DNA of 64,000 bases from positions 62,001 through 126,000 of the IMG/VR virus record IMGVR_UViG_3300045970_000794. The stretch is one strand, 5' to 3'. Positions 9,691-38,587 of the stretch are shown here, piece after piece. Position 1 is the stretch's first letter. Every line of letters begins with the position of its first letter. The position numbers and the translations under genes are program-made. The notes under the pieces were generated by a model. The model was not told where the DNA came from. It was given only the letters and a program-made list of their open reading frames with translations, and did not search any database.

Positions 9691-9732
9691 AATTTTAATT
9701 TTTAAGTTAAACAATTTTATTTATAATTTTTG

Positions 9733-9807
9733 AGACTCTAGTTGGATTCGAACCCACGCTGACGGGTTTAGAAGCCGCCGCTTTAGACCAAGCTAAGCTA
9801 TAGAGCC
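9733..9807 (-). tRNA. amber suppressor tRNA (CTA anticodon)
   Basis: GGCTCTA/TAGAGTC, D stem GCTT/AAGC, GCGGC-TTCTAAA-CCCGT, U73. Confidence 0.75.
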
Positions 9808-13998: not shown

Positions 13999-14026
13999 AA
14001 AAAAAAAGGAATCCGAAGATTCCTTT
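13999..14026 (-). terminator. terminator of RNA operon 2
   Basis: AAGGAATC-ttcg-GATTCCTT plus T run. Confidence 0.8.
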
Positions 14027-14036
14027 GTAAAATGGA

Positions 14037-14089
14037 CAGGTTAGCTTTTTTTTTCTAATAAAGAGCGTTTTAATTGCTGAATGTAACCT
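14037..14089 (-). ncRNA. stem-GCAA family small RNA
   Basis: AGGTTA-CATTCAGCAA...TAACCTG. Confidence 0.6.
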
Positions 14090-14097
14090 TTACCTTG

Positions 14098-14162
14098 TAG
14101 AGGTGGATGGATATGAACCGCCAACCTGTCTTACGACCGCTCTGGACTTGAGCTACACCTCT
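14098..14162 (-). ncRNA. anticodon-less tRNA-like RNA
   Basis: AGAGGTG/CACCTCT, D arm, GTC-GTAA-GAC in place of the anticodon arm, T-like arm. Confidence 0.7.
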
Positions 14163-14173
14163 AATTGAATTGT

Positions 14174-14286
14174 TGGTGTGAAAACCTATTTCGTTCTGGT
14201 TTTTCTTTTACCCGTCATTACATCGGGACACAAATTACGTCCGTAATCGGAGACTATCCACGATTATGTTACCATAACCTTTTCAC
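14174..14286 (-). ncRNA. structured RNA closed by a 7-bp acceptor-like stem with encoded ACCA
   Basis: GTGAAAA/TTTTCAC-A-CCA; no canonical T loop. Confidence 0.4.
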
Positions 14287-14346
14287 AATTTTAACCTTGG
14301 CCTTCGGTTTCCATCGAGATTTAGATGTTTCGTAATCAACAATTTG

Positions 14347-14423
14347 TAGCGGGTCATGGGAGTCGAACCCAGTATCTCTGAGGTTATGAGCCTCGAATGA
14401 TTATTCCGTTTCACTCACCCGCA
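14347..14423 (-). tRNA. tRNA-Met(CAT), initiator-like
   Basis: 1:72 mismatch, GAGG-CTCATAA-CCTC. Confidence 0.8.
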
Positions 14424-14429
14424 ATATCG

Positions 14430-14502
14430 TGGGAAAGAAAGGAGTCGCACCTTAACTTGTATCAACCTCAGATTGTTACCAACCCTACTATACAACTTTC
14501 CC
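14430..14502 (-). ncRNA. anticodon-less tRNA-like RNA
   Basis: GGGAAAG/CTTTCCC-A, GTAT/ATAC stem with expanded loop, AAGG-TGCGACT-CCTT. Confidence 0.6.
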
Positions 14503-14515
14503 AATTTTTTTTTTG

Positions 14516-14587
14516 TAGCGGGAGTAGGACTCGAACCTACGACCTACGGGTTATGAGCCCGCCGAGCTACCACTGCTCCACCCCGCA
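14516..14587 (-). tRNA. tRNA-fMet(CAT)
   Basis: 1:72 mismatch, GCGGG-CTCATAA-CCCGT. Confidence 0.9.
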
Positions 14588-14621
14588 ATATATTTTTAGT
14601 TTAGCTATTTTCAAAAAAAGT

Positions 14622-14694
14622 GTTAAGACGGCTGGATTTGAACACAGCAACTCGGGATTTAGTCCACGCAAGATACTATTTCTATACATCTTAA
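14622..14694 (-). pseudogene. degenerate tRNA-like sequence
   Basis: TTAAGAT/GTCTTAA acceptor and GTTCAAATC T loop; aberrant anticodon loop GGA-CTAAA-TCC. Confidence 0.5.
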
Positions 14695-14726
14695 CACATA
14701 TATAAATATGCGCTAAATTGAAAAAG

Positions 14727-14798
14727 TACTCGATAGGAGAATCGAACTCCTATTTAAAGCTTGAAAAGCTTCCGTCCTAACCGTTAGACGAATCGAGC
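14727..14798 (-). tRNA. tRNA-Glu(TTC)
   Basis: Standard cloverleaf, loop TTTTCAA. Confidence 0.9.
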
Positions 14799-14806
14799 AT
14801 ATGACA

Positions 14807-14866
14807 CAGGAAAACTTTGTTTTCAAATTTTCAGATTTTGATTTTTAAGTTTGCTGAATGTTTCCT
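14807..14866 (-). ncRNA. stem-GCAA family small RNA
   Basis: AGGAAAC-ATTCAGCAA...GTTTTCCTG. Confidence 0.6.
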
Positions 14867-14882
14867 TTAGTCACTTTGTAAA

Positions 14883-14950
14883 CAGGCTAGTTACTTTAAC
14901 ACTACTGAATTTTAAATTTAGTTTGTTTTTAGTTTTGCTGAACCTAACCT
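14883..14950 (-). ncRNA. stem-GCAA family small RNA
   Basis: AGGTTAG-GTTCAGCAA...AACTAGCCTG. Confidence 0.6.
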
Positions 14951-14958
14951 TAATCCCG

Positions 14959-15051
14959 TGGCCCCCGCTGGATTTGAACCAGCACCTATCTTGCGATATG
15001 CTCTCGAATCATTTCTATAAATAGAAGTTATTCTCCTTGAGCTAGGTGACC
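14959..15051 (-). ncRNA. anticodon-less tRNA-like RNA with expanded D loop
   Basis: GGTCACC/GGGGGCC, GCTC/GAGC, TATC-GCAA-GATA, GCTGG-TTCAAAT-CCAGC. Confidence 0.7.
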
Positions 15052-15396
15052 GTGATTTTAGGGATTTTACTTATCTTACGATAGCTGTATCCATTACTGG
15101 TAACTTCATCCCTAAAATTGTGCTTCGAATTCAGTTTGACTGTAGTTCACTAGCTACCACTCATTTTATTGAGCTCACTATGAACAATTCGAAGTGTTTG
15201 TTTGTCTGGGAATCGGCACCCAGAATAGCCTACTATTCACATTTTTATTTTAACAACCCTAAGATGATTCCTTATCGGATAAGCTGGATTCTCAAATCCG
15301 ACAGTAAGGTTGCGTTAGCTAACCAATTATCATTACATTATTGCCGCTCACCATAACGGGTGAACCATAACTACATCTGCTAGACCAAACAATTTG

Positions 15397-15494
15397 TGCC
15401 CGATGGAGGACTCGCACGCTCCACTCTATCTTTCGATATACTCTAGTATCCATTATTATTATAATATGGTAGTACCACTTTAAGTTAATCGGGC
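15397..15494 (-). ncRNA. anticodon-less tRNA-like RNA with expanded D loop
   Basis: GCCCGAT/ATCGGGC, ACTT/GAGT, TATC-GAAA-GATA, GTGCGAG T-loop variant. Confidence 0.7.
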
Positions 15495-15508
15495 TTATTC
15501 AATATTTG

Positions 15509-15612
15509 TGGAGTCCGCTGGAATTGAACCAGCACTGCAATTTCTTGGCGTGCTTGAATTAATAGATTAGCTAAAAGCTTCTCATGAGTATTCTCCCTTA
15601 CACTAGGACCCC
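15509..15612 (-). ncRNA. anticodon-less tRNA-like RNA with G3:U70 acceptor
   Basis: GGGGTCC/GGACTCC-A, GTGT/GCAC, GCTGG-TTCAATT-CCAGC. Confidence 0.7.
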
Positions 15613-15780
15613 AGTTGTGACGGAATGATGATTTATAGATAATTTTACGTGCTACCTAGAAACACCAGTTTTTCACACAGACCACCCGTGAACCCCTTTA
15701 TAACGTAATCATGTTACCCACTTTTTTTAAATTCTCTCATCCGCATAGCCTTTCAGCATTTTTTCATCGGACAAATTAAT

Positions 15781-15846
15781 TAGGAAAACTGGAAGAAAAA
15801 CCCGCCGTTCAAATCTAAATTTTTACGGTTTGCAGAAATCATTCCT
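15781..15846 (-). ncRNA. stem-GCAA family small RNA
   Basis: AGGAATGATTTCTGCAAACCGTAAAAAT...TTTTCCTA. Confidence 0.55.
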
Positions 15847-15924
15847 TACACTTCTTCAAAGAACTAGTTCTTAAATTTATAAAAGTTTGTAACTTAAATA
15901 TATTTTTAGAACGAATTGACTTTG

Positions 15925-15976
15925 CAAATTTACAAACTATTTTATTAAAAAGCAAGTTTTTTTGCAATTATTTTTT
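15925..15976 (-). promoter_or_regulatory. promoter of RNA operon 2 (near-identical to 6863-6912)
   Basis: Direct comparison; one extra T. Confidence 0.75.
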
Positions 15977-16244
15977 AATTATTTTTCTTTTCATTCATTT
16001 CCAATGGTTTAACCATGATAAAAATATGGTGTCTGAGTTGGATATGGTGAAAAACTCTATCCACAGAGTAATATGGTCCATTATAATTAAAATAAACTAT
16101 ATCACCTTCATTTGGTATTAATTTTGATTTAAACCTAACTTTCAACGTTTCATGATTACCATCTTTACCAGCAATCGCAAACGTAATGATTGGCTTCCAA
16201 CTCATCAACCAATGATATGTTATTACAACCCATTTAAATAGCAT
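15975..16244 (-). CDS. hypothetical protein
   Basis: 89-aa ORF (true start may be internal). Confidence 0.5.
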   Translation of the reverse strand: MLFKWVVITYHWLMSWKPIITFAIAGKDGNHETLKVRFKSKLIPNEGDIVYFNYNGPYYSVDRVFHHIQLRHHIFIMVKPLEMNEKKNN

Positions 16245-16429
16245 TAATCTAGATTTTTTTTGGATTGAATGTAAATGGCTTTCTTTTTATTAAGCCTTTT
16301 CTTAACTGATGGTTTTTCGAAATAAACTAAACCCTTTAGTTTTTCAACTAATTTAGTTTTTTTAACCTTAACTTTGAATATTTTTAAGGCTTTATCTATA
16401 CCACCATCTTTTACTGGTATTATTAACAT
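16244..16429 (-). CDS. rpsU: ribosomal protein bS21
   Basis: IPVKDGGIDKALKIFK.KV.K...YFEKPSVKKR. Confidence 0.85.
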   Translation of the reverse strand: MLIIPVKDGGIDKALKIFKVKVKKTKLVEKLKGLVYFEKPSVKKRLNKKKAIYIQSKKNLD

Positions 16430-16433
16430 ACGT

Positions 16434-17036
16434 TTATTTATTTAATTTACTCGTTATTTTTCGTAGTAATCTATCAGTTGAAGTGATTTGAGGAAGAACA
16501 TCAATCATATCACCACCATTAAATATGATGATATCAGATTTAGCCATTTTTTCATCATCACTCATCTGATTTGAGATTCTATCCATTATTTCAACCTCAC
16601 TTAATGTACCTCTAGTCACTGCCCGCTTAATTCTAAGTTCAAGTGGGCAATATACTGTAATAATAAAATCAAAATTAGACTCACCATTAGTTTCAAATAA
16701 TATTGCAGATTCACATAAAATATATGGTGATGTTTGTTCATTAACCCATTCTTCAAATTTTTGACGAAGAACTGGTAATATTATTAAATGTAATTCACTT
16801 AACTTTGATTTATCATTAAACATGATACTACTTATTTTTTTTACATTTATTTTATCAAATTCATCATAAATATCTTCACCAAAAAGTGCCTTAACTTTTA
16901 ATTTCACATCTAACACATCATAACAAGCCTTAGCCTCAATGTCTGTATTATATATTGGAATACCCAAATTATTGAATTTTCGGCAAACATATGATTTACC
17001 ACACCCAATACCGCCAGTAATTGCTACTTTTATCAT
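16434..17036 (-). CDS. coaE: dephospho-CoA kinase
   Basis: KVAITGGIGCGKS...IYNTD...ESAILFE...KSDIII.N. Confidence 0.9.
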   Translation of the reverse strand: MIKVAITGGIGCGKSYVCRKFNNLGIPIYNTDIEAKACYDVLDVKLKVKALFGEDIYDEFDKINVKKISSIMFNDKSKLSELHLIILPVLRQKFEEWVNEQTSPYILCESAILFETNGESNFDFIITVYCPLELRIKRAVTRGTLSEVEIMDRISNQMSDDEKMAKSDIIIFNGGDMIDVLPQITSTDRLLRKITSKLNK

Positions 17037-17038
17037 AA

Positions 17039-17878
17039 TTAATCAAATAAAATTTTACTAATAGGTTGAATAGCCTTTTTATGTTTAAATTTATACTTAT
17101 TATTCCCAAGTAATTGAATTATCTCAAGACCCAGATTGGAAGCTTTAACCGTATCCTCATAAACAACAAACTCAGTAGCACTATGCCAATCATAATATCC
17201 AGCAAACAAATTCATACAATTAAAATCAAAACTGCGTTTAATCGCAAATACATCGGTAAATGGGTCAGTATCTCGAATATTAGAAATACCATATCTTAAT
17301 AATATTGGGTCAACTAGTTTAAAGAACTCTCTATTAAATAGTTGCGTCCTATTTGAAACATATGATAACCAATCAGAACCTGGTGCATCAAATTCAATCG
17401 CATATCCAACACTATTGAATATATCAACATCAGCATTTCTGGAGCCAAGACAACCAATTTCTTCACCTTTAAAAAATGCACCAATAATATTATCAGTTTT
17501 ACTTATTATATCTAAACAAATTGCTATACCAGCTTTATCATCACCGCCAACACCAGTAATAGAATCTATACCTTGTTTTAATGGGTTCAGTGCCGTTAAA
17601 ATAGTTTTATTTTTATAAAATTTTTCATTGATTTTTAATTTTACATCTTTTTCAACCAGCTCACGATGCTCTTGAACGGTATCCATATGTGCAATCACAC
17701 ATGGGAAATACTCACCTTCACCAACTTTACCTTTTTTAAGATAAACATTACCATATGAATCAAGAATTACTGGTATAGAATTTTTAACTCCCCAAGAAAT
17801 TAAAAAATCAATCATCCGTTTTTCATAGTTATAAACGGTTGGAACTGCTAGTACTTCTTTCAATAATTCTATGTCCAT
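17039..17878 (-). CDS. M20/M28/M42-clan zinc peptidase-like protein
   Basis: AHMDTV...GGDDKAGI...EEIGCLGS...EFD...YYDWHSATE. Confidence 0.75.
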   Translation of the reverse strand: MDIELLKEVLAVPTVYNYEKRMIDFLISWGVKNSIPVILDSYGNVYLKKGKVGEGEYFPCVIAHMDTVQEHRELVEKDVKLKINEKFYKNKTILTALNPLKQGIDSITGVGGDDKAGIAICLDIISKTDNIIGAFFKGEEIGCLGSRNADVDIFNSVGYAIEFDAPGSDWLSYVSNRTQLFNREFFKLVDPILLRYGISNIRDTDPFTDVFAIKRSFDFNCMNLFAGYYDWHSATEFVVYEDTVKASNLGLEIIQLLGNNKYKFKHKKAIQPISKILFD

Positions 17879-17995
17879 AATTTAATTTTTATGCAAAGAT
17901 ATGTAAATTATATGTAAAAACCAAATATTAAAGTATTTATTTTAAAATAAAACTCATTATATTGAAATAATAACAATTATTAAAAAACATTAATT

Positions 17996-18145
17996 ATGTA
18001 TCTATTCGGATGTGGATGTGGTAAAAAGAGAGATAATGTAAGGACTAGACCACAGGTAACTAAACCTGTTCAAACCCCTACACCTCCACCAACTAATCCA
18101 CCTAAAACAAACCAATCAAACGGCTACCAAGGTCAAGGTAGTTAA
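17996..18145 (+). CDS. small protein with GCGCGKK motif and Pro/Thr-rich tail (49 aa)
   Basis: Manual translation MYLFGCGCGKKRDNVRTRPQVTKPVQTPTPPP...; followed by a terminator at 18148-18174. Confidence 0.6.
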   Translation: MYLFGCGCGKKRDNVRTRPQVTKPVQTPTPPPTNPPKTNQSNGYQGQGS

Positions 18146-18176
18146 AATAAAAAGCCAGATTACTCTGGCTTTTTCG

Positions 18177-18755
18177 TCAATAATTAATTGAACATTTGCG
18201 GTCTTCCCAATAATCATGTATTATTTTACAAAAATCAAGCATTTCTTGATGAGTCATATTATTTTTAGTATGATTAGCACTTATACTAATAAATTGAATA
18301 TTTCCTTTAATGTACCCTTTTTTAGAATCAATTCTGTCTAATGAAGCGGTATTATTATAATTGCAACCACATTCATTTTTTCGATTGGATTTATGTTTTA
18401 ATTCAACACCAGTATAAACACATAAACCTTTTTGTGAAGTCCACTGAGTTAATAAATCATCTAGGGTTATTGTACATTCAATATTTTTTTCTTTTTGTCT
18501 AATTTTTATACGTCTTAGATATTCTCTAAATTTAGTATATTCATCACATTTAATAATCTTTAAATTTTCATTGTGTTGACCATAGAAATTTTTTAATACT
18601 TCATAATAGGTTGCACTACAATTTAAAGAACAAAAATTTTTCCTACCAATTTTATTATTGCGTCTAACTTCAGAACCATCTTTCATAAATTTAGACCCAC
18701 ATTTTTCACAAATAACTTCAATTTGTGGTCGTTGATATTTCTTTTTATTTTCCAT
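18177..18755 (-). CDS. HNH-like endonuclease
   Basis: CEKC...CSLNC; CVYTG...ASLDRIDSKKGYIKGNIQFI...N..K. Confidence 0.8.
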   Translation of the reverse strand: MENKKKYQRPQIEVICEKCGSKFMKDGSEVRRNNKIGRKNFCSLNCSATYYEVLKNFYGQHNENLKIIKCDEYTKFREYLRRIKIRQKEKNIECTITLDDLLTQWTSQKGLCVYTGVELKHKSNRKNECGCNYNNTASLDRIDSKKGYIKGNIQFISISANHTKNNMTHQEMLDFCKIIHDYWEDRKCSINY

Positions 18756-18950
18756 AATAATAAATATCCCCACAATATAAAAACGCCCAGCTCCACGTGT
18801 CATAAAATAAAAAAAGTGCCATTGGCACTTTTCATATTAATATAAACCAAAATGTTAGTTTATCATAAAAGTAATAGTTTGTTAGTATTTAGTCGAATTT
18901 ATTCAATTCGTGTAGTGCATACCACGTACAGGTAACTAACCTAATGCACC

Positions 18951-19364
18951 TGGAGTTGGAGGGTAATGAACCCTCGTCTTACGAGCTCTTCAATAATATT
19001 CTACATGCTTAGGATTAAGTTTTCTTACTTACCAAAAATATTTAGTTGATTTATGTCACGGTTCAACTACTAAAACCGAGTGTTAATTAGACACCGACAC
19101 TACGGTGCTTTTTTTGTCATTCTTACTCTACTTACACTAAACTAAGTAAAGACTCAGCTTAATGTCATTGAGCAATGACCCGTCTGGCTTCAGTTAGGCA
19201 GCCATCGCCTCTCCAGCAAAAACACCACATGTGGCGTTTGCAAGGAAGTTTTCGTCAACAGATAATTCGTTGCCAGTTACTATTTTGATAGGTTTTTAAG
19301 TGTTTCCATCTAACACTGCATGCTAATTATTTACGACTACACGTAATCTAATCATTTCAACCCC
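18951..19364 (-). ncRNA. ssrA: tmRNA
   Basis: 5' GGGGTTG / 3' CAACTCC-A with G3:U70, T arm GAGGG-TTCATTA-CCCTC, tag ORF 19274-19194 ending AA*. Confidence 0.9.
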
Positions 19365-19412
19365 GTGTTCTGATAAATATAGCGATTTATCAGAAAATGT
19401 AAAGAACGTTAA

Positions 19413-20078
19413 TTATATTTTCTTTTTTGAAACAACAATTTCATCAATGATACCATAATCCTTTGCCTCAACAGCTGTTAACCATTTATCTCTAGTTGCA
19501 TCAGCTTTAACTTCATCAGCAGTTTTACAACAAGCATCACCTAAAATACCGAAAAGAATATCATTGTATTTTTTAGTTTCAGACATTGTAATTTCCATAT
19601 CTTGAATATTACCAACAGCACCAGCAGATACTTGATGTAACATTACTTTACTATAACGTAAACTAGAACGTTTTCCTTTAGTACCTTTAGCCAATAAAAT
19701 TGAACCCATAGATGCGCACATACCAGTATTAACTGTTACTATATCACATTCAATTATATCCATAACATCAACAATTGAAAGTCCAGATTTAACACATCCA
19801 CCTGGTGTATCAATATGCATTCTAATGTCTCTCTTTTCTTGATTATCCATAAACATTAATTGAGCTTGAATAATACTAGCCATAATCTCATCAACAGGTC
19901 TGGCAATCCAAATAATTCTATCCATCATTAACCTAGAAAAAATATCCATTTGGGTTACCCTTAATTGTCTTTCTTCTAGAATATAAGGTGTCATGGAATT
20001 CTCATATCGATATAGATTCAACCCAGAAATACCAGCATGCTTAGTAGCATATTTTTTAAATTCATCGTGTTCACTCAT
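19413..20078 (-). CDS. clpP: ATP-dependent Clp protease proteolytic subunit
   Basis: DIFSRLMMDRII...IDTPGG...CASMGS...MLHQ...RDKWLTAVEAKDYGIID. Confidence 0.95.
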   Translation of the reverse strand: MSEHDEFKKYATKHAGISGLNLYRYENSMTPYILEERQLRVTQMDIFSRLMMDRIIWIARPVDEIMASIIQAQLMFMDNQEKRDIRMHIDTPGGCVKSGLSIVDVMDIIECDIVTVNTGMCASMGSILLAKGTKGKRSSLRYSKVMLHQVSAGAVGNIQDMEITMSETKKYNDILFGILGDACCKTADEVKADATRDKWLTAVEAKDYGIIDEIVVSKKKI

Positions 20079-20090
20079 ATTTTTTTTAAT

Positions 20091-20350
20091 TTAAGTTGTG
20101 TGTATAAATAATGGTGTATTATCACCGAACCAAGCTGAAAGTGTATTAAATTCGAAATATTCTACAGCTTCTTCATATTCCATTCCTTTTTCAACTAATA
20201 TGTTAATGTATTTATCATAATCATATGTAACCACAGCATTAACACCATTCCAACCCTATAAGCTATACCAATAATAGCTTCCTCGTATTCATCATATAAA
20301 ATAGCTTCTTCATTATGTTCAGCTACTTGTTCACGTGTCCATTCACCCAT
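20091..20350 (-). pseudogene. small phage protein, frameshifted
   Basis: MGEWTREQ...EEAIIGIAYRVGM then another frame NAVVTYDYDKY...YFEFNTLSAWFGDNTPLF; 260 nt is not a multiple of 3. Confidence 0.6.
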
Positions 20351-20352
20351 TA

Positions 20353-20835
20353 CTAGAATACTTCACTATCATTAGAATCATTAACTTTCAAATCTGGTTC
20401 AGAATCTGGGTCAATTTCACCATCTTTTTTCTTTTTCTCGTGTTCAAACAACGTTTTAATTGTTTCATGCACTCTTTCACAGATTGGGAAAGTATATTTG
20501 TTGATTACACCAGTGTAAACGCACATATCTGGTTTCTCAATTGTGATTTTACCACTTTCAAGACTGCAATGTATACCAGCAATTAATGTTTCAGCAACAA
20601 TAAGTTTTTGCTGTTCTTCTAATTTATCAAAGATAACTTCATTAATTACAATGACAATATCAATACTTGTCATATGGGTAACTAAATCATTAGCTTTAAT
20701 AGGTTTACCAATTTCTTTTAATGAATTATTGGCCAAAATTTTAATACTAATTTTACTTTCACCTAAACTAGATGCTTTTATTACTTGATTGAAGATTTCT
20801 TCATTCTCATGCTCAATTTCATTATATGTTGCCAT
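20353..20835 (-). CDS. hypothetical protein, resembling putative phage metallopeptidase fold without HExxH
   Basis: DIVIVINEVIFDKL...KITIEKPD pattern. Confidence 0.45.
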   Translation of the reverse strand: MATYNEIEHENEEIFNQVIKASSLGESKISIKILANNSLKEIGKPIKANDLVTHMTSIDIVIVINEVIFDKLEEQQKLIVAETLIAGIHCSLESGKITIEKPDMCVYTGVINKYTFPICERVHETIKTLFEHEKKKKDGEIDPDSEPDLKVNDSNDSEVF

Positions 20836-20880
20836 AAAAATAATTTAATTTAATATTATTGTTTGGCAAAAATACTATAT

Positions 20881-21912
20881 TTATTTCCCTTTGTCCACTA
20901 ATTTCTTCATTTTTTTTAAAATTTCTTTATATTCACTTGAAATATTCTTCGGAACTTCTATACTAGTAACCACATACAAGTCACCTCTACCTTGATTACC
21001 TCTAATATTTAATCCTTTACCTTGTAATCTAAATTGTCTATCAATATCAGTACCCTCTGGTATGTTAATTTTAACAATCGAGCCATCAATGGTTGGAACT
21101 TCAATATCAGAACCCAAAACTAATTCATAATATTTAGCTTTATACTTATAAATTAAGTTATTTTCACTCCTAATGAAGATATCATGAGGTAATTCTTCAA
21201 TTAAAATGTGTAAATCACCAGGTTTATCACCTTTTCTAATTTCACTTCCCCCACCATTAGAAACAAATGTATCACCATTAATTAAACCACACGGTAAATC
21301 AAACTCAAACTCAACTTCATTCATTAACGTACCAGACCCACCACATTTTTCACATGGTTTTAGTATAATTTCACCCTCACCACCACAACTTCTACATACA
21401 AAACTTTGATGTATAATACCCATTGCCGATTGTTGAACTATTGTTTCCATACCACTTCCATTACACACTGTACATGACTTAAAATCACCGCCAGTTCCAT
21501 GACATGAATCACACTTAATTAACCTATTATATTTAATAGTCTTATGTGTACCATTGTGAATATCCTCTAGTGTTAGACTAACTTTAACTCTAAGCGTTTG
21601 TCCAACCCTAATATTACGTTGTTGACGATTTCTACCCATGAATTGATTAATAATATTATGAATATCAACGTTTGATGCGTTATTTTGATGTCCTCTTACG
21701 GAACCAGTAGTATCAAACATTTGTTTCTTTTCTGGGTCAGATAGAACTGAATATGCATCAGAAATCTCTTTGAATTTTTCTTCAGCTTCTTTATTATCTA
21801 GATTTTTATCTGGATGATATTGAAAAGCCTTTTTCCTGTAAGATTTTTTAATTTCTTCGTCAGTTGCATTTCTTTCAACACCTAAAATAGCATAATAATC
21901 TTTATTTTCCAT
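20881..21912 (-). CDS. dnaJ: DnaJ chaperone
   Basis: J domain with HPD; four CxxCxGxG repeats; C-terminal domain. Confidence 0.95.
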
Positions 21913-22387
21913 TTATTTGTAGTTTAAGTTCTTTAATAATTTTTTCTTTAATACCAGTTTGTTTAATACCTTGCATCCATTTCGGACAACATACGAAATA
22001 CTCTAATTGGAACATTAATAAATCATCAACAGCTACCCACGCTAAAATTTCATCTTTATTGCGTTCTAAATAGAGTGTTATTTCTTCAATTCTACCACCT
22101 TCTAAATTAGTTGGCGTATATCCACCAGAATTTGGTGTAATATCAATAACTGGTGCTTTTATATTGTAATGTGCGAACATTTCTCGTAGATTATTAATAC
22201 TAAATTGATTCCTCCAATCTGAACTAATAACTATTTCATATGGTATCTCATCATATAAAGCATTTAATACATCACAACATTTTTTATCGAGTGGTGGGCA
22301 TAGACCCCATTTGGTTAGTTTTGATTTACACCAACCAACAGAAATAACACCATCAATATCAAGAAATATAACAACTCTTTTTTTCAT
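21902..22387 (-). CDS. HAD-domain (Swiss-Army-Knife RNA repair-like) phosphatase
   Basis: IFLDIDGV...IVISSDWR...WVAVDD. Confidence 0.75.
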
Positions 22388-22444
22388 TTTGCAAATATAA
22401 TACTTTTTTATTTATTTTCCAAAAAAAATGTATATTATTATCAC

Positions 22445-23107
22445 ATGTATCGAATTATTTTAGCTAAAAACAAAAAACATAAAAAAATACTGTTCAAATC
22501 TAGGGATAAAGATTTGACTTATGATGAATTTAATGCATTAATTGAAGAGAATGTTGTATTATTCCCAAAAAAATTCGTTAACTATAATACTATCACCCCA
22601 GTCCAATATGAAATATTAATAATAAAAAGACGTAAAGATGGTGATATTAATAGAATGGTTAGAAATGATTTGGGGCAACTTGTTGAAGAAACAACAACAT
22701 CCGCAAAATGGATTATAATAGATAAACACCCATATTACATGGAAGAAACATTCTGGGTGTGGGGTTTTAACCATAGGTCAGACCGTTTCGATGCAAAACG
22801 AATTGTTCAAGAAATCTTATTAAAGAACATTCGTAAAAAACATATGGTAAAGCAAGTTGTAATTGTCTATAATAAGCTAATTATACAGTCAGATTCAGAC
22901 GATTTTAATCTAATCATATGCAAGTGTCAAAATGATGCTGTTCGTCTTCACAACGCTTTAAAACAAGCCGTATCAAAATCCAGAATAAAAAACATAATTT
23001 TCTTTGGATTAGCTAAGCCAAAACAAATTAGTGATATGTATGAAATCATTATGGAACATACTGGTTGGGACCGAATGCAAGTTAGAAGATTAAGTACAAG
23101 GCATTAA
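22445..23107 (+). CDS. hypothetical protein
   Basis: 220-aa plus-strand ORF. Confidence 0.65.
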   Translation: MYRIILAKNKKHKKILFKSRDKDLTYDEFNALIEENVVLFPKKFVNYNTITPVQYEILIIKRRKDGDINRMVRNDLGQLVEETTTSAKWIIIDKHPYYMEETFWVWGFNHRSDRFDAKRIVQEILLKNIRKKHMVKQVVIVYNKLIIQSDSDDFNLIICKCQNDAVRLHNALKQAVSKSRIKNIIFFGLAKPKQISDMYEIIMEHTGWDRMQVRRLSTRH

Positions 23108-23634
23108 GGACCTGGTGTTATAATTTCATCATCCTCAGCTTCATTCAAATCTACTTGACCAACATCAAAATTTTTAGCAATTTCATTAATTACATCATTA
23201 ATTTTACTCATATCAGCTGGCTTAATTTGAATTGGATTAATGCATTCAATTCTTTCTTTATCATCAGTTGGTAGGAAGAATGCCATCATATTTGCTTTAC
23301 GAGCTGCAATTACATCATTCACTGATTGAGCGTAAGGTGCCATTATTTTCGGATTCATCATTAATTCTCGGTCCAAATAAAATACTAGTATTAATGGGTG
23401 TGACTCACTTGCAGTGTACTCTGATTCTTCATCTTTTTGTTTAATATATTCATCAAATGAAACATATTCATATTTTTCTAATGGGATATCGTATTTCCTC
23501 ATTAATTCAGATTCTTTATCTAATTTACCATTTTTATCCTTAACAAATTCATGACACTCAATTGAATTATCATTATCATCTTTTAAATAAACTAGATAAA
23601 CGTCATCCCCAGTGCATTTTGTAACTACTTTCAT
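23104..23634 (-). CDS. hypothetical protein
   Basis: 176-aa ORF. Confidence 0.65.
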   Translation of the reverse strand: MKVVTKCTGDDVYLVYLKDDNDNSIECHEFVKDKNGKLDKESELMRKYDIPLEKYEYVSFDEYIKQKDEESEYTASESHPLILVFYLDRELMMNPKIMAPYAQSVNDVIAARKANMMAFFLPTDDKERIECINPIQIKPADMSKINDVINEIAKNFDVGQVDLNEAEDDEIITPGP

Positions 23635-23703
23635 ACTATAATTTTAATGTATTATTATTATAGCGTAATAATATTTAAAATTTTTGAATTAGTAAAGGAT
23701 ATT

Positions 23704-23738
23704 AAAAAAAAATGGCCACAATCGTTAGATTATGACCA
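23704..23738 (-). terminator. terminator after vWA gene and small RNA
   Basis: TGGTCATAATC/GATTGTGGCCA plus T run. Confidence 0.7.
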
Positions 23739-23753
23739 ATTTTTAACTTGAGA

Positions 23754-23903
23754 CAGAATGGGGGAGTCGTTTACTTCAAGATTCCGATTAGAAGGTTTTT
23801 TTTGTTTCACACGTTTATAGTGCTCGGTAGAATAATATCTAAAACTACCAACGGATTACAGTTATTAACATTTTCATATTTTTACCGTTGCCGCAATCAT
23901 TCT
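23754..23903 (-). ncRNA. stem-GCAA family RNA directly downstream of the TROVE/vWA gene
   Basis: AGAATG-ATTGCGGCAACGGTAAAAAT...CATTCTG. Confidence 0.6.
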
Positions 23904-23914
23904 TTACTCAAAGT

Positions 23915-24988
23915 TTATCCTAGATTGATATTTGCATATCTTTCTGACTTAACAACATCCATCATCATTGCATATGGAGTGAAATCTTTACCAGCTAATA
24001 ATGATTTCAAAATCGATGGTGAAAATCCACTTACGAGGCAAGTACCTTTTTTATCAAATTGTACTGGGAAATTGTCGTTTCTAGCGTGCAAGTTCCAATA
24101 TACAATTTTAGGTAATACGTAACCAGCATCTGCATACATTCTTTCAACCATTGCTTGCGCAGTATCTGAACGTATAGTAGCACTATTGAATTCCATATCT
24201 GAGAAAATAATCAACATAGTTGGCATTTCATCAGCTGGTACATTGTGCTTAACCGCTTGATTTAAAACCATACGGTACATAGCTTCAATATCAGTACTCA
24301 TTTCCCAATGAGCACGTTTCAATTGACTATATCTATCGCTCAAAGAACCCTTCAAGTACTGTAACTCTGGTCTTGAACTGAAAGTAACGAAAGCGTCCTT
24401 GAACATACCAACATTTCTTTCACTGATGTAAAGACCAAGTGAGATACATACGTCCATACATGTAAGTGTTCCACCACCAGCTGGGCAAGTCATTGAACCT
24501 GATACATCACAAACTGGTAACAATCTTTCCTTATTACCTTCAAGAAAATTAGGTAAAGCATTCCACTGTGCGTCAGCACCGTTAGAATTACCGTTATTAA
24601 GATTTTTGATGATATCGTATGGGTATACGGCACCAGCATTAATCTTAGTTTCACCTTTCTTCAATGAATCTAAGTATTTTGTGAATCTTTCGTAATCTCT
24701 CTTACCGAAAGCTTTCATATAGCCAGAGATAGCCTTTGATGGAAGTTTGCTATATTCAATAGCATCCCAATCTTTAGAACACATTTTTTGTTCAACAGTA
24801 TTTGACATTCTAACCAATAACTGTCTGTATTCTTTTGGAGACAAACCTAAGTATTTTCTCAACATAGTTGCTTGTAATTTCTTAGTTCTATCACCAACAT
24901 GTGGTCTTGGCATCCACTTAGCAACCAAACTCCCCGTCATTATTTTTAACGATAATAAACTTTTTAATTCTTCTTTTTTCGTTTTCAT
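23915..24988 (-). CDS. TROVE/Ro60-like DUF2828-type protein, C-terminal piece with vWA domain
   Basis: AKWMPR...NTVEQKMC...INAGAVYPY...CDVSGSM (MIDAS)...IFSDMEF...VYWNL...SGFSP. Confidence 0.85.
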   Translation of the reverse strand: MKTKKEELKSLLSLKIMTGSLVAKWMPRPHVGDRTKKLQATMLRKYLGLSPKEYRQLLVRMSNTVEQKMCSKDWDAIEYSKLPSKAISGYMKAFGKRDYERFTKYLDSLKKGETKINAGAVYPYDIIKNLNNGNSNGADAQWNALPNFLEGNKERLLPVCDVSGSMTCPAGGGTLTCMDVCISLGLYISERNVGMFKDAFVTFSSRPELQYLKGSLSDRYSQLKRAHWEMSTDIEAMYRMVLNQAVKHNVPADEMPTMLIIFSDMEFNSATIRSDTAQAMVERMYADAGYVLPKIVYWNLHARNDNFPVQFDKKGTCLVSGFSPSILKSLLAGKDFTPYAMMMDVVKSERYANINLG

Positions 24989-25080
24989 ATATTTTCATGT
25001 TAAATTGTTCGATAATTATTTATCTTTTTCAAATATTAACTATATTTATTATTAGGCATCCACTTAAAACTTTTATATTT

Positions 25081-25809
25081 ATGGAAACAATACCTTATAC
25101 TTACAAATTGATTTTTAAACCTACTGGTCAATACTATTATGGTGTTAGATACGCTAAAGGTTGTAATCCAACTGATTTATGGGACAAATATTTCACATCT
25201 TCTAAACACATCCATAAACTTATTAAAGAATATGGATTAAACTCTTTTATTATTAAGATTACTAAAACATTTAACGATAAAAATGACGCTATTACTCATG
25301 AATTAAATGTATTAACTAGAGCTAATGCTCACAAAAATGGTAAATTTATTAATAAAACAATTTGTAAAGCACCGCCATCACATGATGGATTGATAATAAT
25401 TCACCACATTGAATTAGATTTTGAAACCTTTCACAGTCCTAATTTACCAATTCCCATTGGGTGGATAAAAGGTACTAATGATAAACACAAAATAACCCAA
25501 TCTAATATTCGTAAAGGTAAACCAGCTCATAATAAAAATAAAAAATGTAAATTAACTGGTCCTTGTACCAAAGAAAGAAAAATAGCTATTAGTGAATCAA
25601 GAAAGCTAACACCAAAAATAACATGTGAATACTGTGGTAAACAATGTGATGGTGGTAATTTTAAAAGATTTCACGGAGATAACTGTAAATCGAACCCTAA
25701 TATTGACCAACAAAAAATCAAAGAACGTTCTGAGATAACTAAAAAATCTTATTTAACTCAAATAAATAAAGGTAATTTTAATAAGTTTAAAGGGAAAATT
25801 CGTGAATAA
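25081..25809 (+). CDS. GIY-YIG homing endonuclease (antisense, inside the split TROVE gene)
   Basis: PYTYKLIFKPTGQYYYGVRYAKGC...YFTSS; probable start METIP at 25081. Confidence 0.8.
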   Translation: METIPYTYKLIFKPTGQYYYGVRYAKGCNPTDLWDKYFTSSKHIHKLIKEYGLNSFIIKITKTFNDKNDAITHELNVLTRANAHKNGKFINKTICKAPPSHDGLIIIHHIELDFETFHSPNLPIPIGWIKGTNDKHKITQSNIRKGKPAHNKNKKCKLTGPCTKERKIAISESRKLTPKITCEYCGKQCDGGNFKRFHGDNCKSNPNIDQQKIKERSEITKKSYLTQINKGNFNKFKGKIRE

Positions 25810-26284
25810 GTCTTTCGCATTCTTCTTCAGATAATGTATCTATTTTAGAAAGAATTTCTTGCGCTTTTTGGTTTGACTTCAAACCTTCAGCAATAACTGC
25901 TAATGCATCATTTTGTAATGCAGTACCAACGAAAACCAAAAGGTCATCCCATCTACCATATTCTGAAATATGTACTAAATTTGCTTTGATAATATCTTTG
26001 TGCTTTTCAGCAAGATATGAACAGATTTCTCTGAAAATTCTTCTTTCACCAGCACCACCACGAACGTCACGTGCCCAGAATGCTAATCTAAGAGCAGTAA
26101 GTTTGTCTTCAGCAAATGCTTGGCTAAATGCGGCAATAATACGATTTTTATCTTGAGTTCTCATTGCACCTATTTGGAAAAATAGGTTTACGCATGAATT
26201 AAGTGAACTTGAATTGGTAACCATACCGTTTTCAGTAAAGGTATCTTCTGTCTGCATAGCAGATACTAATGAATTTTTTCTCAT
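25787..26284 (-). CDS. TROVE/Ro60-like DUF2828-type protein, N-terminal piece
   Basis: TENGMVT...FWARDVRGGAGERR...EYGRWDDL. Confidence 0.85.
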   Translation of the reverse strand: MRKNSLVSAMQTEDTFTENGMVTNSSSLNSCVNLFFQIGAMRTQDKNRIIAAFSQAFAEDKLTALRLAFWARDVRGGAGERRIFREICSYLAEKHKDIIKANLVHISEYGRWDDLLVFVGTALQNDALAVIAEGLKSNQKAQEILSKIDTLSEEECERLIHEFSL

Positions 26285-27420: not shown

Positions 27421-27723
27421 TTAATTACATTTTTTAAAACCACCACCACACACTCGGCAGTTACCATAATCATGAATATCTACTTCATGTTTATACCAAT
27501 GGCACTTTGGTGTTTCATTAACAGTTACTTTATGTCTAAGCTTATGCTGAGATACTTTCCAGTTAGCATACATTTCAGCAGCTTCTTGAAAAAATACAGC
27601 TCTATGGCCAGTAACTAAGGTCTTACCCAACCCATACTTTGCAGCAATCTCAGCTTTACAGTCATTATAAGTCATTTTATTATATTTTATGTAACCAAAC
27701 ATAAAGCTTGGTATTTGATGCAT
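27421..27723 (-). CDS. hypothetical protein
   Basis: 100-aa ORF with C-terminal CxxC; true start probably internal. Confidence 0.5.
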   Translation of the reverse strand: MHQIPSFMFGYIKYNKMTYNDCKAEIAAKYGLGKTLVTGHRAVFFQEAAEMYANWKVSQHKLRHKVTVNETPKCHWYKHEVDIHDYGNCRVCGGGFKKCN

Positions 27724-37789: not shown

Positions 37790-38587
37790 TTAAAATTTGA
37801 ATATTGAGAACGTTATACCTAAACCAACCTGTAAATTAAACTTCAAATCAGAACCAACGCCAACTCCAATATACGGACCAACACCCCATTTTTTGTTTTT
37901 AGTGAATTTTTTCATCACTGGATGATTTTTAGGGTCAATAATAGCACCTTCTAAATCACTTATAGTTAGGTTAGGATAATCGCTTCTGGCGAATATTTCA
38001 ATATTACCATCTTTTTCACGTAACCCTGTGATTAAATTAAATTTAATATCATCTTTAAATAAACTAGTATTTAGCGGAGTTATTTTATACTCAACCTTTT
38101 CAACACCATTAACAATTGTTTTTATTGTATCTTGTTTAAATCTACTTTCACCAGCAATTGACCTAGAATTCTTCGCATTGAAGGTCGTATCATAATCCCA
38201 TTTTAATCCATAAACACCATTACTATATTGAATTAATTTATTCTCAATGTATATCGTATCTCTAAGCTTAATATGTGCTAAAATACTCATTAATTCACTA
38301 ACTTTACCTTTTTCTTTCTTTAATTCATCAGCTAAATTTTTACTTAATTTATCTAAATCACCTTTTTCGGTAATTAATACATTAATTGATGATTCTAGTT
38401 GACCATTTTTTGTTTTACCAACTCTAACACTATCAGTCAACGCCTTTGTATTTTGTTCTGACATTGAAAGTCTAGTATCAAGATTTTGTATTCTAGTCCA
38501 ACCAATATAGCCAATGATAACCAACAATAATATTACTATGATTAAAACATTGCGCTGTACTTTAATATTTAAAGTTTTATCTTCCAT
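37790..38587 (-). CDS. membrane-anchored coiled-coil protein with C-terminal beta strands (spanin-like)
   Basis: N-terminal TM helix, coiled coil, WGVGPYIGVG...GLGITFSIFKF; next to amidase. Confidence 0.5.
   Translation of the reverse strand: MEDKTLNIKVQRNVLIIVILLLVIIGYIGWTRIQNLDTRLSMSEQNTKALTDSVRVGKTKNGQLESSINVLITEKGDLDKLSKNLADELKKEKGKVSELMSILAHIKLRDTIYIENKLIQYSNGVYGLKWDYDTTFNAKNSRSIAGESRFKQDTIKTIVNGVEKVEYKITPLNTSLFKDDIKFNLITGLREKDGNIEIFARSDYPNLTISDLEGAIIDPKNHPVMKKFTKNKKWGVGPYIGVGVGSDLKFNLQVGLGITFSIFKF

What the first reader, a model, noticed from the sequence alone, without database searches (positions are those of the whole stretch)
14037..23903. Family of stem-'GCAA' small RNAs, one directly downstream of the TROVE/Ro60-like gene
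Five elements (14037-14089, 14807-14866, 14883-14950, 15781-15846, 23754-23903) share a closing helix starting AGG/AGA and ending CCTG/TCTG/CCTA. The helix sequence varies with compensation, is followed by a conserved (TTCA/TTCT/TGCG)GCAA, and encloses a variable A-rich interior. The 15781 and 23754 copies also share ATGATT..GCAA.C.GTAAAAAT. Ro60/TROVE proteins bind Y RNAs through a terminal stem. Inference: these are Y-RNA-like partners of the DUF2828-type protein.
Basis: partly seen in the sequence, partly recalled or inferred. Interest (0 to 1): 0.75.

Follow-up and report, generated by a model that had tools for sequence, protein, structure and literature searches.

The report
Phage mini Y-RNAs beside Ro-like gene
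A 362-kb pond phage carries a family of 55-150-nt structured small RNAs (a terminal stem followed by a CAGCAA motif) that travels across many phages with a Ro60-shaped "DUF2828" protein gene, so they are most likely that protein's Y-RNA-type partners; the short ones also look very like the Class I RNAs of Dictyostelium.

Summary
All five elements lie on the minus strand. E1-E3 (14036-14090, 14806-14867, 14882-14951) are clear members of one family: AAG, a 6-7-bp covarying stem, (A/U)U(U/A)CAGCAA, a variable A-rich interior, the 3' stem, CUGU. E5 (23753-23904) is a long form that starts 11 nt after the stop codon of the DUF2828/DUF7788 gene. It has orthologues with compensatory changes in relatives. 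E4 is a doubtful paralogue of E5.

A covariance model, and a separate pattern scan that did not use the protein, find the family in many phages. It lies on the same strand as a DUF2828-type gene and usually within 700 nt of it. In a blind control of five tRNA-rich phages, only Aeh1 had the gene and only Aeh1 had the RNAs.

The intact protein is predicted to fold like Ro60 (TM 0.63, top 13 PDB hits). In relatives the same stem and motif enclose a YrlA-type tRNA-like domain.

The Y-RNA-partner reading is therefore supported, though neither binding nor expression has been shown. The kind of system is known (Ro60 with Y RNA, also in phages). The motif, the minimal form and the protein family are a new variant. 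Rfam's only resemblance is a sub-threshold match to Dictyostelium Class I RNA.

The parts
14036..14090 (-). E1, short Y-RNA-like element: A-AGGTTA stem, CATTCAGCAA motif, A-rich interior, TAACCT-GT. It is the last gene of the tRNA array.
   Evidence: R1 66.4 bits; R2 52.6 bits with filters off; pattern match; RF01414 24.2 bits, below threshold
14806..14867 (-). E2, short element: AGGAAA/TTTCCT stem, CATTCAGCAA motif, inner helix ACTT/AAGT and hairpin TCAAA/TTTGA
   Evidence: R1 63.8 bits; R2 48.3 bits; fold
14882..14951 (-). E3, short element: AGGTTAG/CTAGCCT stem (one G-U pair), GTTCAGCAA motif
   Evidence: R1 56.5 bits; R2 37.2 bits
15624..15847 (-). E4, doubtful. The 5' end AAGGAATGATTTCTGCAA and the CCGT/ACGG hairpin resemble E5. 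It is the first transcribed feature after the array's promoter-like block.
   Evidence: sequence; MFE uses the 8-bp closure, z-score -0.27; not found by R1 or R2
23753..23904 (-). E5, long form: AGAATG/CATTCT closing stem, ATTGCGGCAA motif, three internal hairpins, CUGU end. It starts 11 nt after the stop codon of the Ro-like gene.
   Evidence: orthologue L182:1676-1834 with 22 shared pairs, 5 compensatory; syntenic long forms in L003, L005, L010, L048, L183; R2 only 11.4 bits
23713..23738 (-). intrinsic terminator immediately after E5
   Evidence: 11 pairs, T-run
14005..14026 (-). intrinsic terminator immediately after E1, ending the tRNA/sRNA array
   Evidence: 9 pairs, T-run
15925..15975 (-). 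promoter-like block (TTGCAAAAAAACTTGC...TAGTTTGTAAATTTGCA) upstream of E4. It is repeated upstream of other tRNA arrays.
   Evidence: near-identical copies at window 6870-6912(-) and L002 ~4200-4250(-); function inferred
23915..24988 (-). C-terminal piece (357 aa) of the Ro60-like protein: end of the DUF2828 helical ring plus the DUF7788 vWA domain
   Evidence: Pfam PF25043 2.4e-50 and PF11443 2.5e-19; intact homologue folds like Ro60
25787..26284 (-). N-terminal piece (165 aa) of the same protein: residues 1-138 of the ring
   Evidence: 84% identical to residues 1-138 of the intact 478-aa homologue P0003; Pfam DUF2828 positions 1-136
24997..25809 (+). GIY-YIG (SegE-like) homing-endonuclease ORF lying between the two pieces, on the opposite strand
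   Evidence: Pfam PF19835, E 6.4e-4, below its cut-off; the same split layout occurs in L183, L184 and L190

Best explanation
The elements are genes for small stable RNAs that serve as the Y-RNA-type ligands of the phage's Ro60-like protein, which belongs to the DUF2828/DUF7788 family.

Shown:
- They form a conserved, covarying family built as AAG, a 6-7-bp terminal stem, (A/U)U(U/A)CAGCAA, a variable interior that often holds a hairpin with a 7-nt anticodon-loop-like loop, an A-rich tail, the 3' stem, then CUGU or CUGG.
- The family co-occurs with the Ro-like gene, on its strand, across distant phage groups.
- The protein is predicted to be a Ro60-type helical ring closed by a vWA domain with an intact MIDAS motif.
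- In some phages the same stem-and-motif module encloses a YrlA-type tRNA-like domain.

Inferred:
- E4, the tRNAs, E3, E2 and E1 are transcribed as one array, from the promoter-like block near 15950 to the terminator at 14005-14026. They are cut out together with the tRNAs at the conserved A|AG and CUG|U borders.
- E5 is made by read-through from the Ro-like gene and ends at its own terminator.
- The ring binds the terminal stem and the single-stranded CAGCAA motif on its outer face, as Ro60 binds the GGUCCGA or GNCGAA strand of Y RNAs.
- The variable module (anticodon-arm-like, T-arm-like, or larger in E5) then gates the ring's cavity or tethers it to a host partner such as PNPase or tRNA-handling enzymes. 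This would fit RNA quality control or repair during infection by a phage that brings its own tRNAs, tmRNA, ClpP and DnaJ.
For: - Family and covariation. The 47 unique pattern-scan members have 28 different stem tetramers, a median length of 62 nt and 32% GC.
- Co-occurrence: 98 of 99 model hits lie on the gene's strand in 63 homologue loci. Gene within the stored flank: 29 of 67 paired loci against 0 of 48 unpaired loci; all 29 are on the same strand and most lie within 700 nt. Twelve more records hold the gene elsewhere, and all five records at least 90% complete have it.
- Blind control: concordant in five of five phages.
- Mycobacteriophage Rumpelstiltskin has three elements (stem + CUAACAGCAA or CUACAGCAA) directly after its 'Ro-like RNA binding protein' gene. 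No tRNA was found within 2.5 kb, and the middle element carries T- and D-arm mimics.
- L006:4922-5037 combines the family's ends with a tRNA-like core that scores as YrlA at E 7e-7.
- Related jumbo phages repeat the layout: a long form after the gene and short forms kilobases away.
- Protein: AF2 pLDDT 91.7. The top 13 PDB hits are all Ro60, Rsr or phage Ro60, best E 1.6e-8, TM 0.63. The top five Swiss-Prot models are RO60. The MIDAS residues D-x-S-x-S, T and D are invariant in 63 homologues.
- Precedent: Ro60 orthologues with adjacent same-strand Y RNAs in 254 bacteria and 22 phages (PMC4201824), and Thermus phage phiLo Ro60 binding two phage-encoded Yrl RNAs and host PNPase (PMC12135203).
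Against: - No binding data and no expression data. The window's DNA is found only in two pond-metagenome DNA runs.
- The motif is not the GNCGAAN0-1G or GGUCCGA motif of known Y RNAs, and no window element reaches Rfam YrlA even at E<=10.
- E1-E4 lie 8-10 kb from the gene, inside a tRNA array, so linkage within this genome is loose.
- E4 and E5 are not significant under the general model.
- Folding energies do not differ from shuffles (z -0.27 and -1.14).
- The Ro-like gene is split here, so its activity depends on two pieces assembling.
- About 24 paired loci lie on fragmentary contigs with no gene visible, one of them 118 kb long.
Confidence: 0.7

Rival explanations
1. The elements are by-products or punctuation of tRNA arrays: decayed tRNA remnants or processing signals for RNase P, Z or E. 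They would be linked to the Ro-like gene only because both sit in the tRNA-rich regions of large phages.
For: E1-E3, E6 and E8 lie between tRNA genes, each a few nt after a tRNA 3' end. One partial copy sits at the variable-arm position of a tRNA-like gene. Interiors carry anticodon-loop-like and T-arm-like hairpins.
Against: The tRNA-rich phages T4, T5, phiCbK and S-PM2 have neither the gene nor the RNA, whereas Aeh1 has both. Rumpelstiltskin has three copies right after the gene, with no tRNA found within 2.5 kb. In 29 of 29 loci the RNA is on the gene's strand, mostly within 700 nt. The conserved CAGCAA motif and AAG/CUGU ends are not tRNA features.
Confidence: 0.12
2. They are cis-acting regulatory structures (attenuators, RNase targets or protein-binding operators) that control expression of the Ro-like gene or of the tRNA operon, rather than free-standing RNAs.
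For: E5 lies in the 3' UTR position of the gene. In other phages copies lie just upstream of the gene.
Against: There are several copies per genome, up to tens of kb from the gene. Copies lie both upstream and downstream. Separate intrinsic terminators follow E1 and E5. Both ends are conserved, as expected of a processed RNA. Relatives have a terminator between the gene and the long form.
Confidence: 0.08
3. They are free small RNAs of the Class I type that act through a different partner (an RRM protein, as in Dictyostelium) or as sponges or base-pairing regulators. The Ro-like protein would then be only a genomic neighbour.
For: The architecture matches Class I RNAs, for which the known direct binder is the RRM protein Rnp1A (PMC7919456). 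Rfam RF01414 is the only family that picks them up, at 22-30 bits.
Against: No RRM gene was noticed in the locus. The tight same-strand linkage to a Ro60-fold gene, and the fusion of the module to YrlA-type cores, point to Ro biology.
Confidence: 0.08

Closest known systems
Bacterial and phage Y RNAs (YrlA/YrlB, Rfam RF02553) with Rsr/Ro60; Thermus phage phiLo Yrl1/Yrl2 with phiRo60
   Same: Small RNAs encoded next to a Ro60-fold ring protein and on its strand. The 5' and 3' ends pair into a stem, with a conserved single-stranded motif on the 5' side. There are several paralogues per genome. Some members carry a tRNA-like T/D-arm module (PMC4201824, PMC12135203).
   Different: The protein matches Pfam DUF2828 + DUF7788, not TROVE, even at E<=1. 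The motif is (U)UACAGCAA or AUUCAGCAA, not GNCGAAN0-1G or CGAA. The window's copies are 53-70 nt without a tRNA-like domain, and none reaches RF02553. Most lie inside tRNA arrays, kilobases from the gene.
Dictyostelid Class I RNAs (Rfam RF01414)
   Same: About 60 nt long and about 32% GC. A 6-bp terminal stem in which structure, not sequence, is conserved. A motif directly after the 5' stem (consensus CCUUACAGCAA; many phage copies have UUACAGCAA, the window has AUUCAGCAA). A variable, A-rich remainder. Start AAG and end CUGU (PMC7919456). RF01414 hits of 22-30 bits fell on R1/R2-detected or pattern-matched elements wherever they were checked against those positions.
   Different: Every score is below the gathering threshold of 41.5. 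The distance from the conserved G to the motif is one nt shorter. The phage copies have no DUSE promoter. Class I RNAs are reported as restricted to Dictyostelia and as binding the RRM protein Rnp1A. Whether Dictyostelium has a DUF2828-type protein could not be checked here.
Ro60 / Rsr (TROVE + vWA ring)
   Same: The predicted fold of the intact homologue superposes on Xenopus, human, Deinococcus and phage Ro60 over residues 13-468 (TM 0.48-0.63). The vWA domain has MIDAS residues.
   Different: Sequence identity is 11-17% and there is no sequence-level PDB hit. The protein is about 480 aa rather than about 530. In this window it is encoded as two polypeptides.

Membership tests
Y RNA / YrlA (RF02553) | Encoded close to a Ro60 orthologue and on its strand | tested here: met
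   E5 starts 11 nt after the stop codon. E1-E4 are on the same strand, 8-10 kb away. Across phages, 29 of 29 are on the same strand, mostly within 700 nt.
Y RNA / YrlA (RF02553) | The 5' and 3' ends pair into a stem that carries the Ro-binding site | tested here: met
   Stem 99.4% paired with strong covariation; 28 stem variants. That this stem is the binding site is inferred.
Y RNA / YrlA (RF02553) | GNCGAAN0-1G (bacteria) or GGUCCGA (animals) motif near the 5' end | tested here: not met
   The motif here is CATTCAGCAA or GTTCAGCAA (E1-E3), ATTTCTGCAA (E4) and ATTGCGGCAA (E5).
Y RNA / YrlA (RF02553) | tRNA-like domain (T-arm and D-arm mimics) in at least one Y RNA of the genome | tested here: inconclusive
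   No YrlA hit in the window at E<=10. E8, outside the window, has a T-arm-like hairpin. Relatives L006 and L181 have the domain inside the same module.
Y RNA / YrlA (RF02553) | Rfam gathering score of 69 bits | tested here: not met
   No window hit; relatives score 21-39 bits.
Y RNA / YrlA (RF02553) | Bound and stabilised by the Ro60 orthologue | not testable with these tools
   Needs RIP, EMSA or Northern blots in a strain lacking the protein.
Dictyostelid Class I RNA (RF01414) | Short (about 6 bp) stem joining the 5' and 3' ends, conserved in structure but not in sequence | tested here: met
Dictyostelid Class I RNA (RF01414) | Conserved 11-nt motif (consensus CCUUACAGCAA) next to the 5' half of the stem | tested here: inconclusive
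   The window copies share CAGCAA plus two further positions. Many relatives share UUACAGCAA, 9 of 11. Spacing is one nt shorter.
Dictyostelid Class I RNA (RF01414) | Conserved ends AAG ... CUGU, length about 60 nt, GC 32-41% | tested here: met
   E1, E2, E3, E5, E6 and E8 start A-AG and end CTG-T. Family median is 62 nt and 32% GC. The window copies are 26-29% GC.
Dictyostelid Class I RNA (RF01414) | Rfam gathering score of 41.5 bits | tested here: not met
   E1 scores 24.2 bits; relatives 22.3-30.1 bits.
Dictyostelid Class I RNA (RF01414) | DUSE promoter about 60 nt upstream; dictyostelid genome | tested here: not met
   Phage genome; the elements lie inside a polycistronic tRNA array.
Ro60 / TROVE protein | Helical-repeat ring closed by a vWA domain with MIDAS | tested here: met
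   AF2 pLDDT 91.7. Foldseek top 13 PDB hits are all Ro60 or Rsr, TM up to 0.63. D281, S283, S285, T352 and D384 are invariant.
Ro60 / TROVE protein | Match to Pfam TROVE (PF05731) | tested here: not met
   Only PF11443 and PF25043 match at E<=1.

The most novel reading that the evidence does not exclude
The phage RNAs and the Class I RNAs of dictyostelid amoebae may be one RNA class. Both are about 60 nt, start AAG, have a covarying 6-7-bp terminal stem followed by UUACAGCAA, and end CUGU. Class I RNAs have no known mechanism and are thought to be unique to Dictyostelia. On this reading they would be Y-RNA-type ligands of DUF2828-type Ro60 paralogues, a protein family that also occurs in eukaryotes. 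Either Dictyostelia acquired the system from bacteria or phages, or it is much older than assumed.
Probability: 0.3. Interest if true: 0.85.

Novelty: new variant of a known kind. Interest (0 to 1): 0.62.

Why it matters
Ro60 with Y RNA is a conserved RNA-surveillance particle and a human autoantigen. In bacteria and phages it has been traced only through TROVE-annotated proteins and YrlA-type RNAs.

This analysis assigns an RNA ligand family to a much larger Ro-shaped family labelled only with DUF names. That family has 6,909 clusters at 50% identity and occurs in 710 GenBank phage records, including Felixounavirus, Listeria A511-like, Campylobacter, Vibrio and mycobacteriophages. Many of those phages are cultivable, so the prediction can be tested at once.

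The analysis also defines a minimal Y RNA: a stem, a 9-nt motif and one variable hairpin. That should help to separate what Ro recognises from what the RNA recruits.

If the resemblance to Class I RNA reflects common descent or a common partner, it would give a first mechanistic handle on an abundant RNA class that regulates development in Dictyostelium.

Tried and rejected
- Rfam at gathering thresholds gave only tRNAs and the tmRNA. Lenient scans gave only sub-threshold Dicty_Class_I hits and, in relatives, YrlA hits.
- Expression. The window's sequence is held only by two pond-metagenome DNA runs. For a Felixounavirus locus, contigs from 'RNA' metagenome runs cover genes and RNAs evenly and carry no read ends, so they cannot be told apart from phage DNA carry-over.
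- Thermodynamics. E4-long and E5 fold no better than shuffles.
- A five-way MAFFT/RNAalifold alignment of distant long forms recovered only the closing stem. The pairwise comparison with the close relative was informative.
- A sequence search of the PDB with the protein found nothing. The fold search was needed.
- AlphaFold-DB clusters and the ESM Atlas confirmed eukaryotic DUF2828/DUF7788 proteins, but organisms were hidden or coarse, so whether Dictyostelium has one could not be settled.
- Avesson et al. 2011, which names the four proteins bound to DdR-21, is not in the library.
- Considered and rejected: a + strand promoter (all neighbouring genes are on the minus strand and the stems covary); a MITE-like repeat (copies differ throughout except for the motif and the paired positions).
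- No complex prediction was sent, because that tool gives no verdict for RNA partners.

Full report
CONTEXT. The window is bases 62001-126000 of a 362,102-bp IMG/VR phage genome with direct terminal repeats, rated 100% complete. Its DNA is found in pond metagenomes. The genome is about 30% GC, and almost all genes near the finding are on the minus strand. The window holds 13 ARAGORN-called tRNAs, a tmRNA (18950-19364, minus strand) and genes for ClpP, DnaJ and CoaE.

THE OBSERVATION. All five elements exist as described when read as reverse complement. E1 (14036-14090), E2 (14806-14867) and E3 (14882-14951) share one plan: A-AGG, four variable nt, RTTCAGCAA, 30-45 nt of A-rich sequence, the complement of the variable nt, then CCTG-T. 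The 5' pattern alone occurs three times against 0.00 expected. The stems AGGTTA/TAACCT, AGGAAA/TTTCCT and AGGTTAG/CTAGCCT compensate one another.

These three lie between tRNA genes of one array. A promoter-like block repeated before other tRNA arrays opens that array, and an intrinsic terminator right after E1 closes it. The rest of the genome holds two more full copies, at 27442-27498 and 37794-37883 on the minus strand. The second has an exact UUACAGCAA and a T-arm-like hairpin. There is also a partial copy inside a tRNA-like gene.

THE FAMILY. I built a covariance model (R1) from four copies of this genome and one copy from another phage, with only the 6-bp closing stem as structure. In 63 viral loci fetched because they encode a homologue of the DUF2828 gene, R1 gave 99 hits at E<10, and 98 were on the gene's strand. 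In 31 aligned members:
- the stem is 99.4% paired;
- five of six pairs show double changes (48 cells);
- the covariation score is 0.753 against 0.293 in shuffles (0 of 500 reach it);
- sliding the 3' partner drops pairing to 24-40%.

I then scanned all viral contigs for AAGGNNNNTTACAGCAA, a 25-55-nt gap, then CCTGT, which makes no reference to the protein. The outcome was bimodal: 62 matches have all four N positions paired with the four nt before CCTGT, and 30 have none. About 2% would be expected to pair fully by chance. The 47 unique paired elements use 28 different stem tetramers, have a median length of 62 nt and are 32% GC. Eighteen have a hairpin with a 7-nt loop (2.6 in shuffles), and 13 of those fit Y-U-NNN-R-A like an anticodon loop (0 in shuffles).

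LINK TO THE GENE.
- Of 67 paired loci, 29 hold a DUF2828-type gene within the stored flank. All 29 have it on the RNA's strand, mostly within 700 nt, either upstream or downstream.
- Of 48 unpaired (chance) loci, none hold the gene.
- Whole-record searches add 12 more paired records with the gene.
- All five paired records that are at least 90% complete have it. The records without it are fragments of 2-57% completeness.
- Fourteen control records have none, apart from one 20-bit marginal match.

As a blind control I took five tRNA-rich reference phages without knowing their gene content. Aeh1 has the gene (99276-100694, minus strand) and three model hits (111136-111516, minus strand, E 9e-9 to 3e-3). 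T4, T5, phiCbK and S-PM2 have neither.

Mycobacteriophage Rumpelstiltskin shows that the link does not depend on tRNA arrays. Three elements directly follow its 'Ro-like RNA binding protein' gene: GGACG + CUAACAGCAA, GGACUC + CUACAGCAA and GGUCA + CUAACAGCAA, each closed by the complementary strand. No tRNA was found within 2.5 kb. The middle element carries T- and D-arm mimics.

THE LONG FORM, E5. E5 starts 11 nt after the stop codon of the gene's C-terminal piece and ends at a terminator. The general model scores it at only 11.4 bits. Its orthologue in a close relative with an intact gene (L182; protein 79% identical) keeps the ends, the motif and three hairpins, while the loops diverge. The two share 22 pairs, 5 of them compensatory. 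More distant relatives (L003, L005/L035, L010, L048, L183) have 126-195-nt RNAs at the same place, with covarying closing stems (AGAATAC/GTATTCT, AGATG/CATCT, AGGTGC/GTATCT, AGATA/TATCT) and an N-T-N-C-N-GCAA motif. Their genomes also carry short forms kilobases away.

E4 shares about 24 of its first 30 nt and one hairpin with E5, with one compensatory change. Neither model finds it, and its better closure (8 bp) would extend it to 15624. I regard it as a probable but unproven paralogue.

THE PROTEIN. The 357-aa ORF matches DUF7788 (a vWA domain) and only the last quarter of DUF2828. Most homologues are about 480 aa. The missing 138 residues are encoded by a separate ORF at 25787-26284, which is 84% identical to the N-terminus of an intact homologue. 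A GIY-YIG endonuclease ORF on the opposite strand lies between the two pieces. Some relatives share this split.

An AlphaFold2 model of the intact homologue (pLDDT 91.7, pTM 0.91) matches Ro60 over its whole length:
- The top 13 PDB hits are Xenopus and human Ro60, Deinococcus Rsr and Thermus phage phiLo Ro60 (best E 1.6e-8, TM 0.63). The next hits are isolated vWA domains at E>0.01.
- The top five Swiss-Prot models are RO60.
- MIDAS residues are invariant in 63 homologues.
- No TROVE Pfam match and no sequence-level PDB match exist.

The protein is therefore a divergent Ro60-fold family. GenBank phage records call it 'RNA-binding protein', 'vWFA protein' or 'Ro-like RNA binding protein'.

RELATION TO KNOWN Y RNAs. 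Chen et al. 2014 (PMC4201824) found YrlA RNAs within 4 kb of TROVE-annotated Ro60 genes and on their strand in 254 bacteria and 22 phages. These RNAs have a 5' GNCGAAN0-1G motif and a tRNA-like core. The phiLo study (PMC12135203) showed a phage Ro60 binding two phage Yrl RNAs and host PNPase.

The present family has the same logic but a different motif, and none of the window's copies reaches Rfam YrlA. The bridge is L006:4922-5037. It has the family's ends (AAGGATTC + TTACAGCAA ... GAATCCTGT) around a T-arm and D-arm core that scores as YrlA at E 7e-7. The neighbouring L006 element and the middle Rumpelstiltskin element are similar. I therefore read the short forms as minimal Y RNAs that keep the presumed Ro-binding module and carry a small variable hairpin.

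RELATION TO CLASS I RNAs. The only Rfam family that picks up the short forms is Dicty_Class_I_RNA (RF01414). E1 scores 24.2 bits and copies in other phages 22.3-30.1 bits, all below the 41.5-bit threshold. Wherever I compared these hits with R1/R2 or pattern positions they coincided with family members; the remaining hits were not individually inspected.

Kjellin et al. 2021 (PMC7919456) define Class I RNAs by five features: about 60 nt; 32-41% GC; a 6-bp terminal stem conserved in structure only; an 11-nt motif next to the 5' stem; and conserved ends AAG and CUGU. The phage family shares every one of these, including nine identical motif positions in many copies. The spacing differs by one nt and there is no DUSE promoter. 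Kjellin et al. found no Class I RNAs outside Dictyostelia and do not mention Ro60. I could not test whether dictyostelids encode a DUF2828-type protein. This is a lead, not a result.

MECHANISM.
Shown: a covarying RNA family; its genomic coupling to a Ro60-fold gene; terminators after E1 and E5; fusion of the module to tRNA-like cores in some relatives.
Inferred: co-transcription with the tRNAs and processing at the conserved borders; binding of the stem and CAGCAA strand to the ring's outer face; gating of the ring or tethering it to a host nuclease or tRNA enzyme.
Not shown: expression, binding and phenotype.

VERDICT. This is a new variant of the known Ro60 and Y RNA system. It is widespread in cultivable phages, so it can be tested directly. 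The sub-threshold resemblance to Dictyostelium Class I RNAs deserves a direct test.

Noticed in passing
window 23915-26284 (-) and 24997-25809 (+): The Ro-like gene is split into a 165-aa N piece and a 357-aa C piece, with a GIY-YIG (SegE-like) homing-endonuclease ORF on the opposite strand between them. Close relatives have either an intact 478-aa gene (L182) or the same kind of split (L183, L184, L190). No group I intron was detected by Rfam.
   Followed up: partly
window 14090-15700 (-): The tRNA array holds many tRNA-like sequences with good T-arms and acceptor stems but odd D or anticodon arms, or 20-50-nt insertions. ARAGORN and Rfam miss them or score them weakly (for example 14958-15051, called 'tRNA-Tyr(ata)', 94 nt, 28.7 bits; and 14430-14502, 22.3 bits). 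Several have a variable arm with a GNRA loop.
   Followed up: no
genome 27793-27829 (-) = L002:3793-3829: A partial copy of the element (AAGAATGC TTTCAGCAA plus the E2-like hairpin) sits at the variable-arm position of a tRNA-like gene. Its 5' half-stem pairs with the sequence just upstream, like an anticodon stem. This hints that the short RNAs and tRNA genes have exchanged parts.
   Followed up: partly
window 15925-15975 (-), 6870-6912 (-); L002 ~4200-4250 (-): A near-identical ~50-nt block (TAATTGCAAAAAA(A)CTTGCTTTTTAATAAAATAGTTTGTAAATTTGCA) precedes tRNA arrays. It resembles a Bacteroidota-type promoter (TTG ... TAnnTTTG), which may hint at the host.
   Followed up: no
window 18950-21912 (-): A phage-encoded tmRNA (72.6 bits) lies next to ClpP (19413-20078) and a full DnaJ (20881-21912). 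The same order is conserved in relatives (L182, L190).
   Followed up: no
window 9732-9807 (-): A tRNA with anticodon CUA (an amber suppressor; ARAGORN labels it tRNA-Pyl). ORFs near the finding are intact under table 11, and I did not test for TAG recoding.
   Followed up: no
L040:7125-7198 and L046 (same place): In a ~150-kb phage group the Ro-like gene is followed by a c-di-GMP-I-GGC riboswitch-like element (55.9 bits, gathering score 59) instead of a long-form RNA. The short-form RNA lies upstream of the gene there.
   Followed up: no
L118:5023-5084 (-), L114:3461-3522 (-): The Rfam 'freshwater-1' RNA (72.9 and 68.6 bits, gathering score 72) lies in the same tRNA arrays as the Y-like RNAs in two phages that carry them (the Ro-like gene itself was found in L118's locus; the L114 record is a fragment with none visible). 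It is a second orphan small RNA kept in this kind of array.
   Followed up: no
viral loci L066-L180: Many short-form members carry an internal hairpin whose 7-nt loop reads Y-U-NNN-R-A (CUUUUAA, CUUGAAA, CUGAUAA and others), like an anticodon loop: 13 of 47 against 0 in shuffles. The window's own E1-E3 do not show it clearly.
   Followed up: partly
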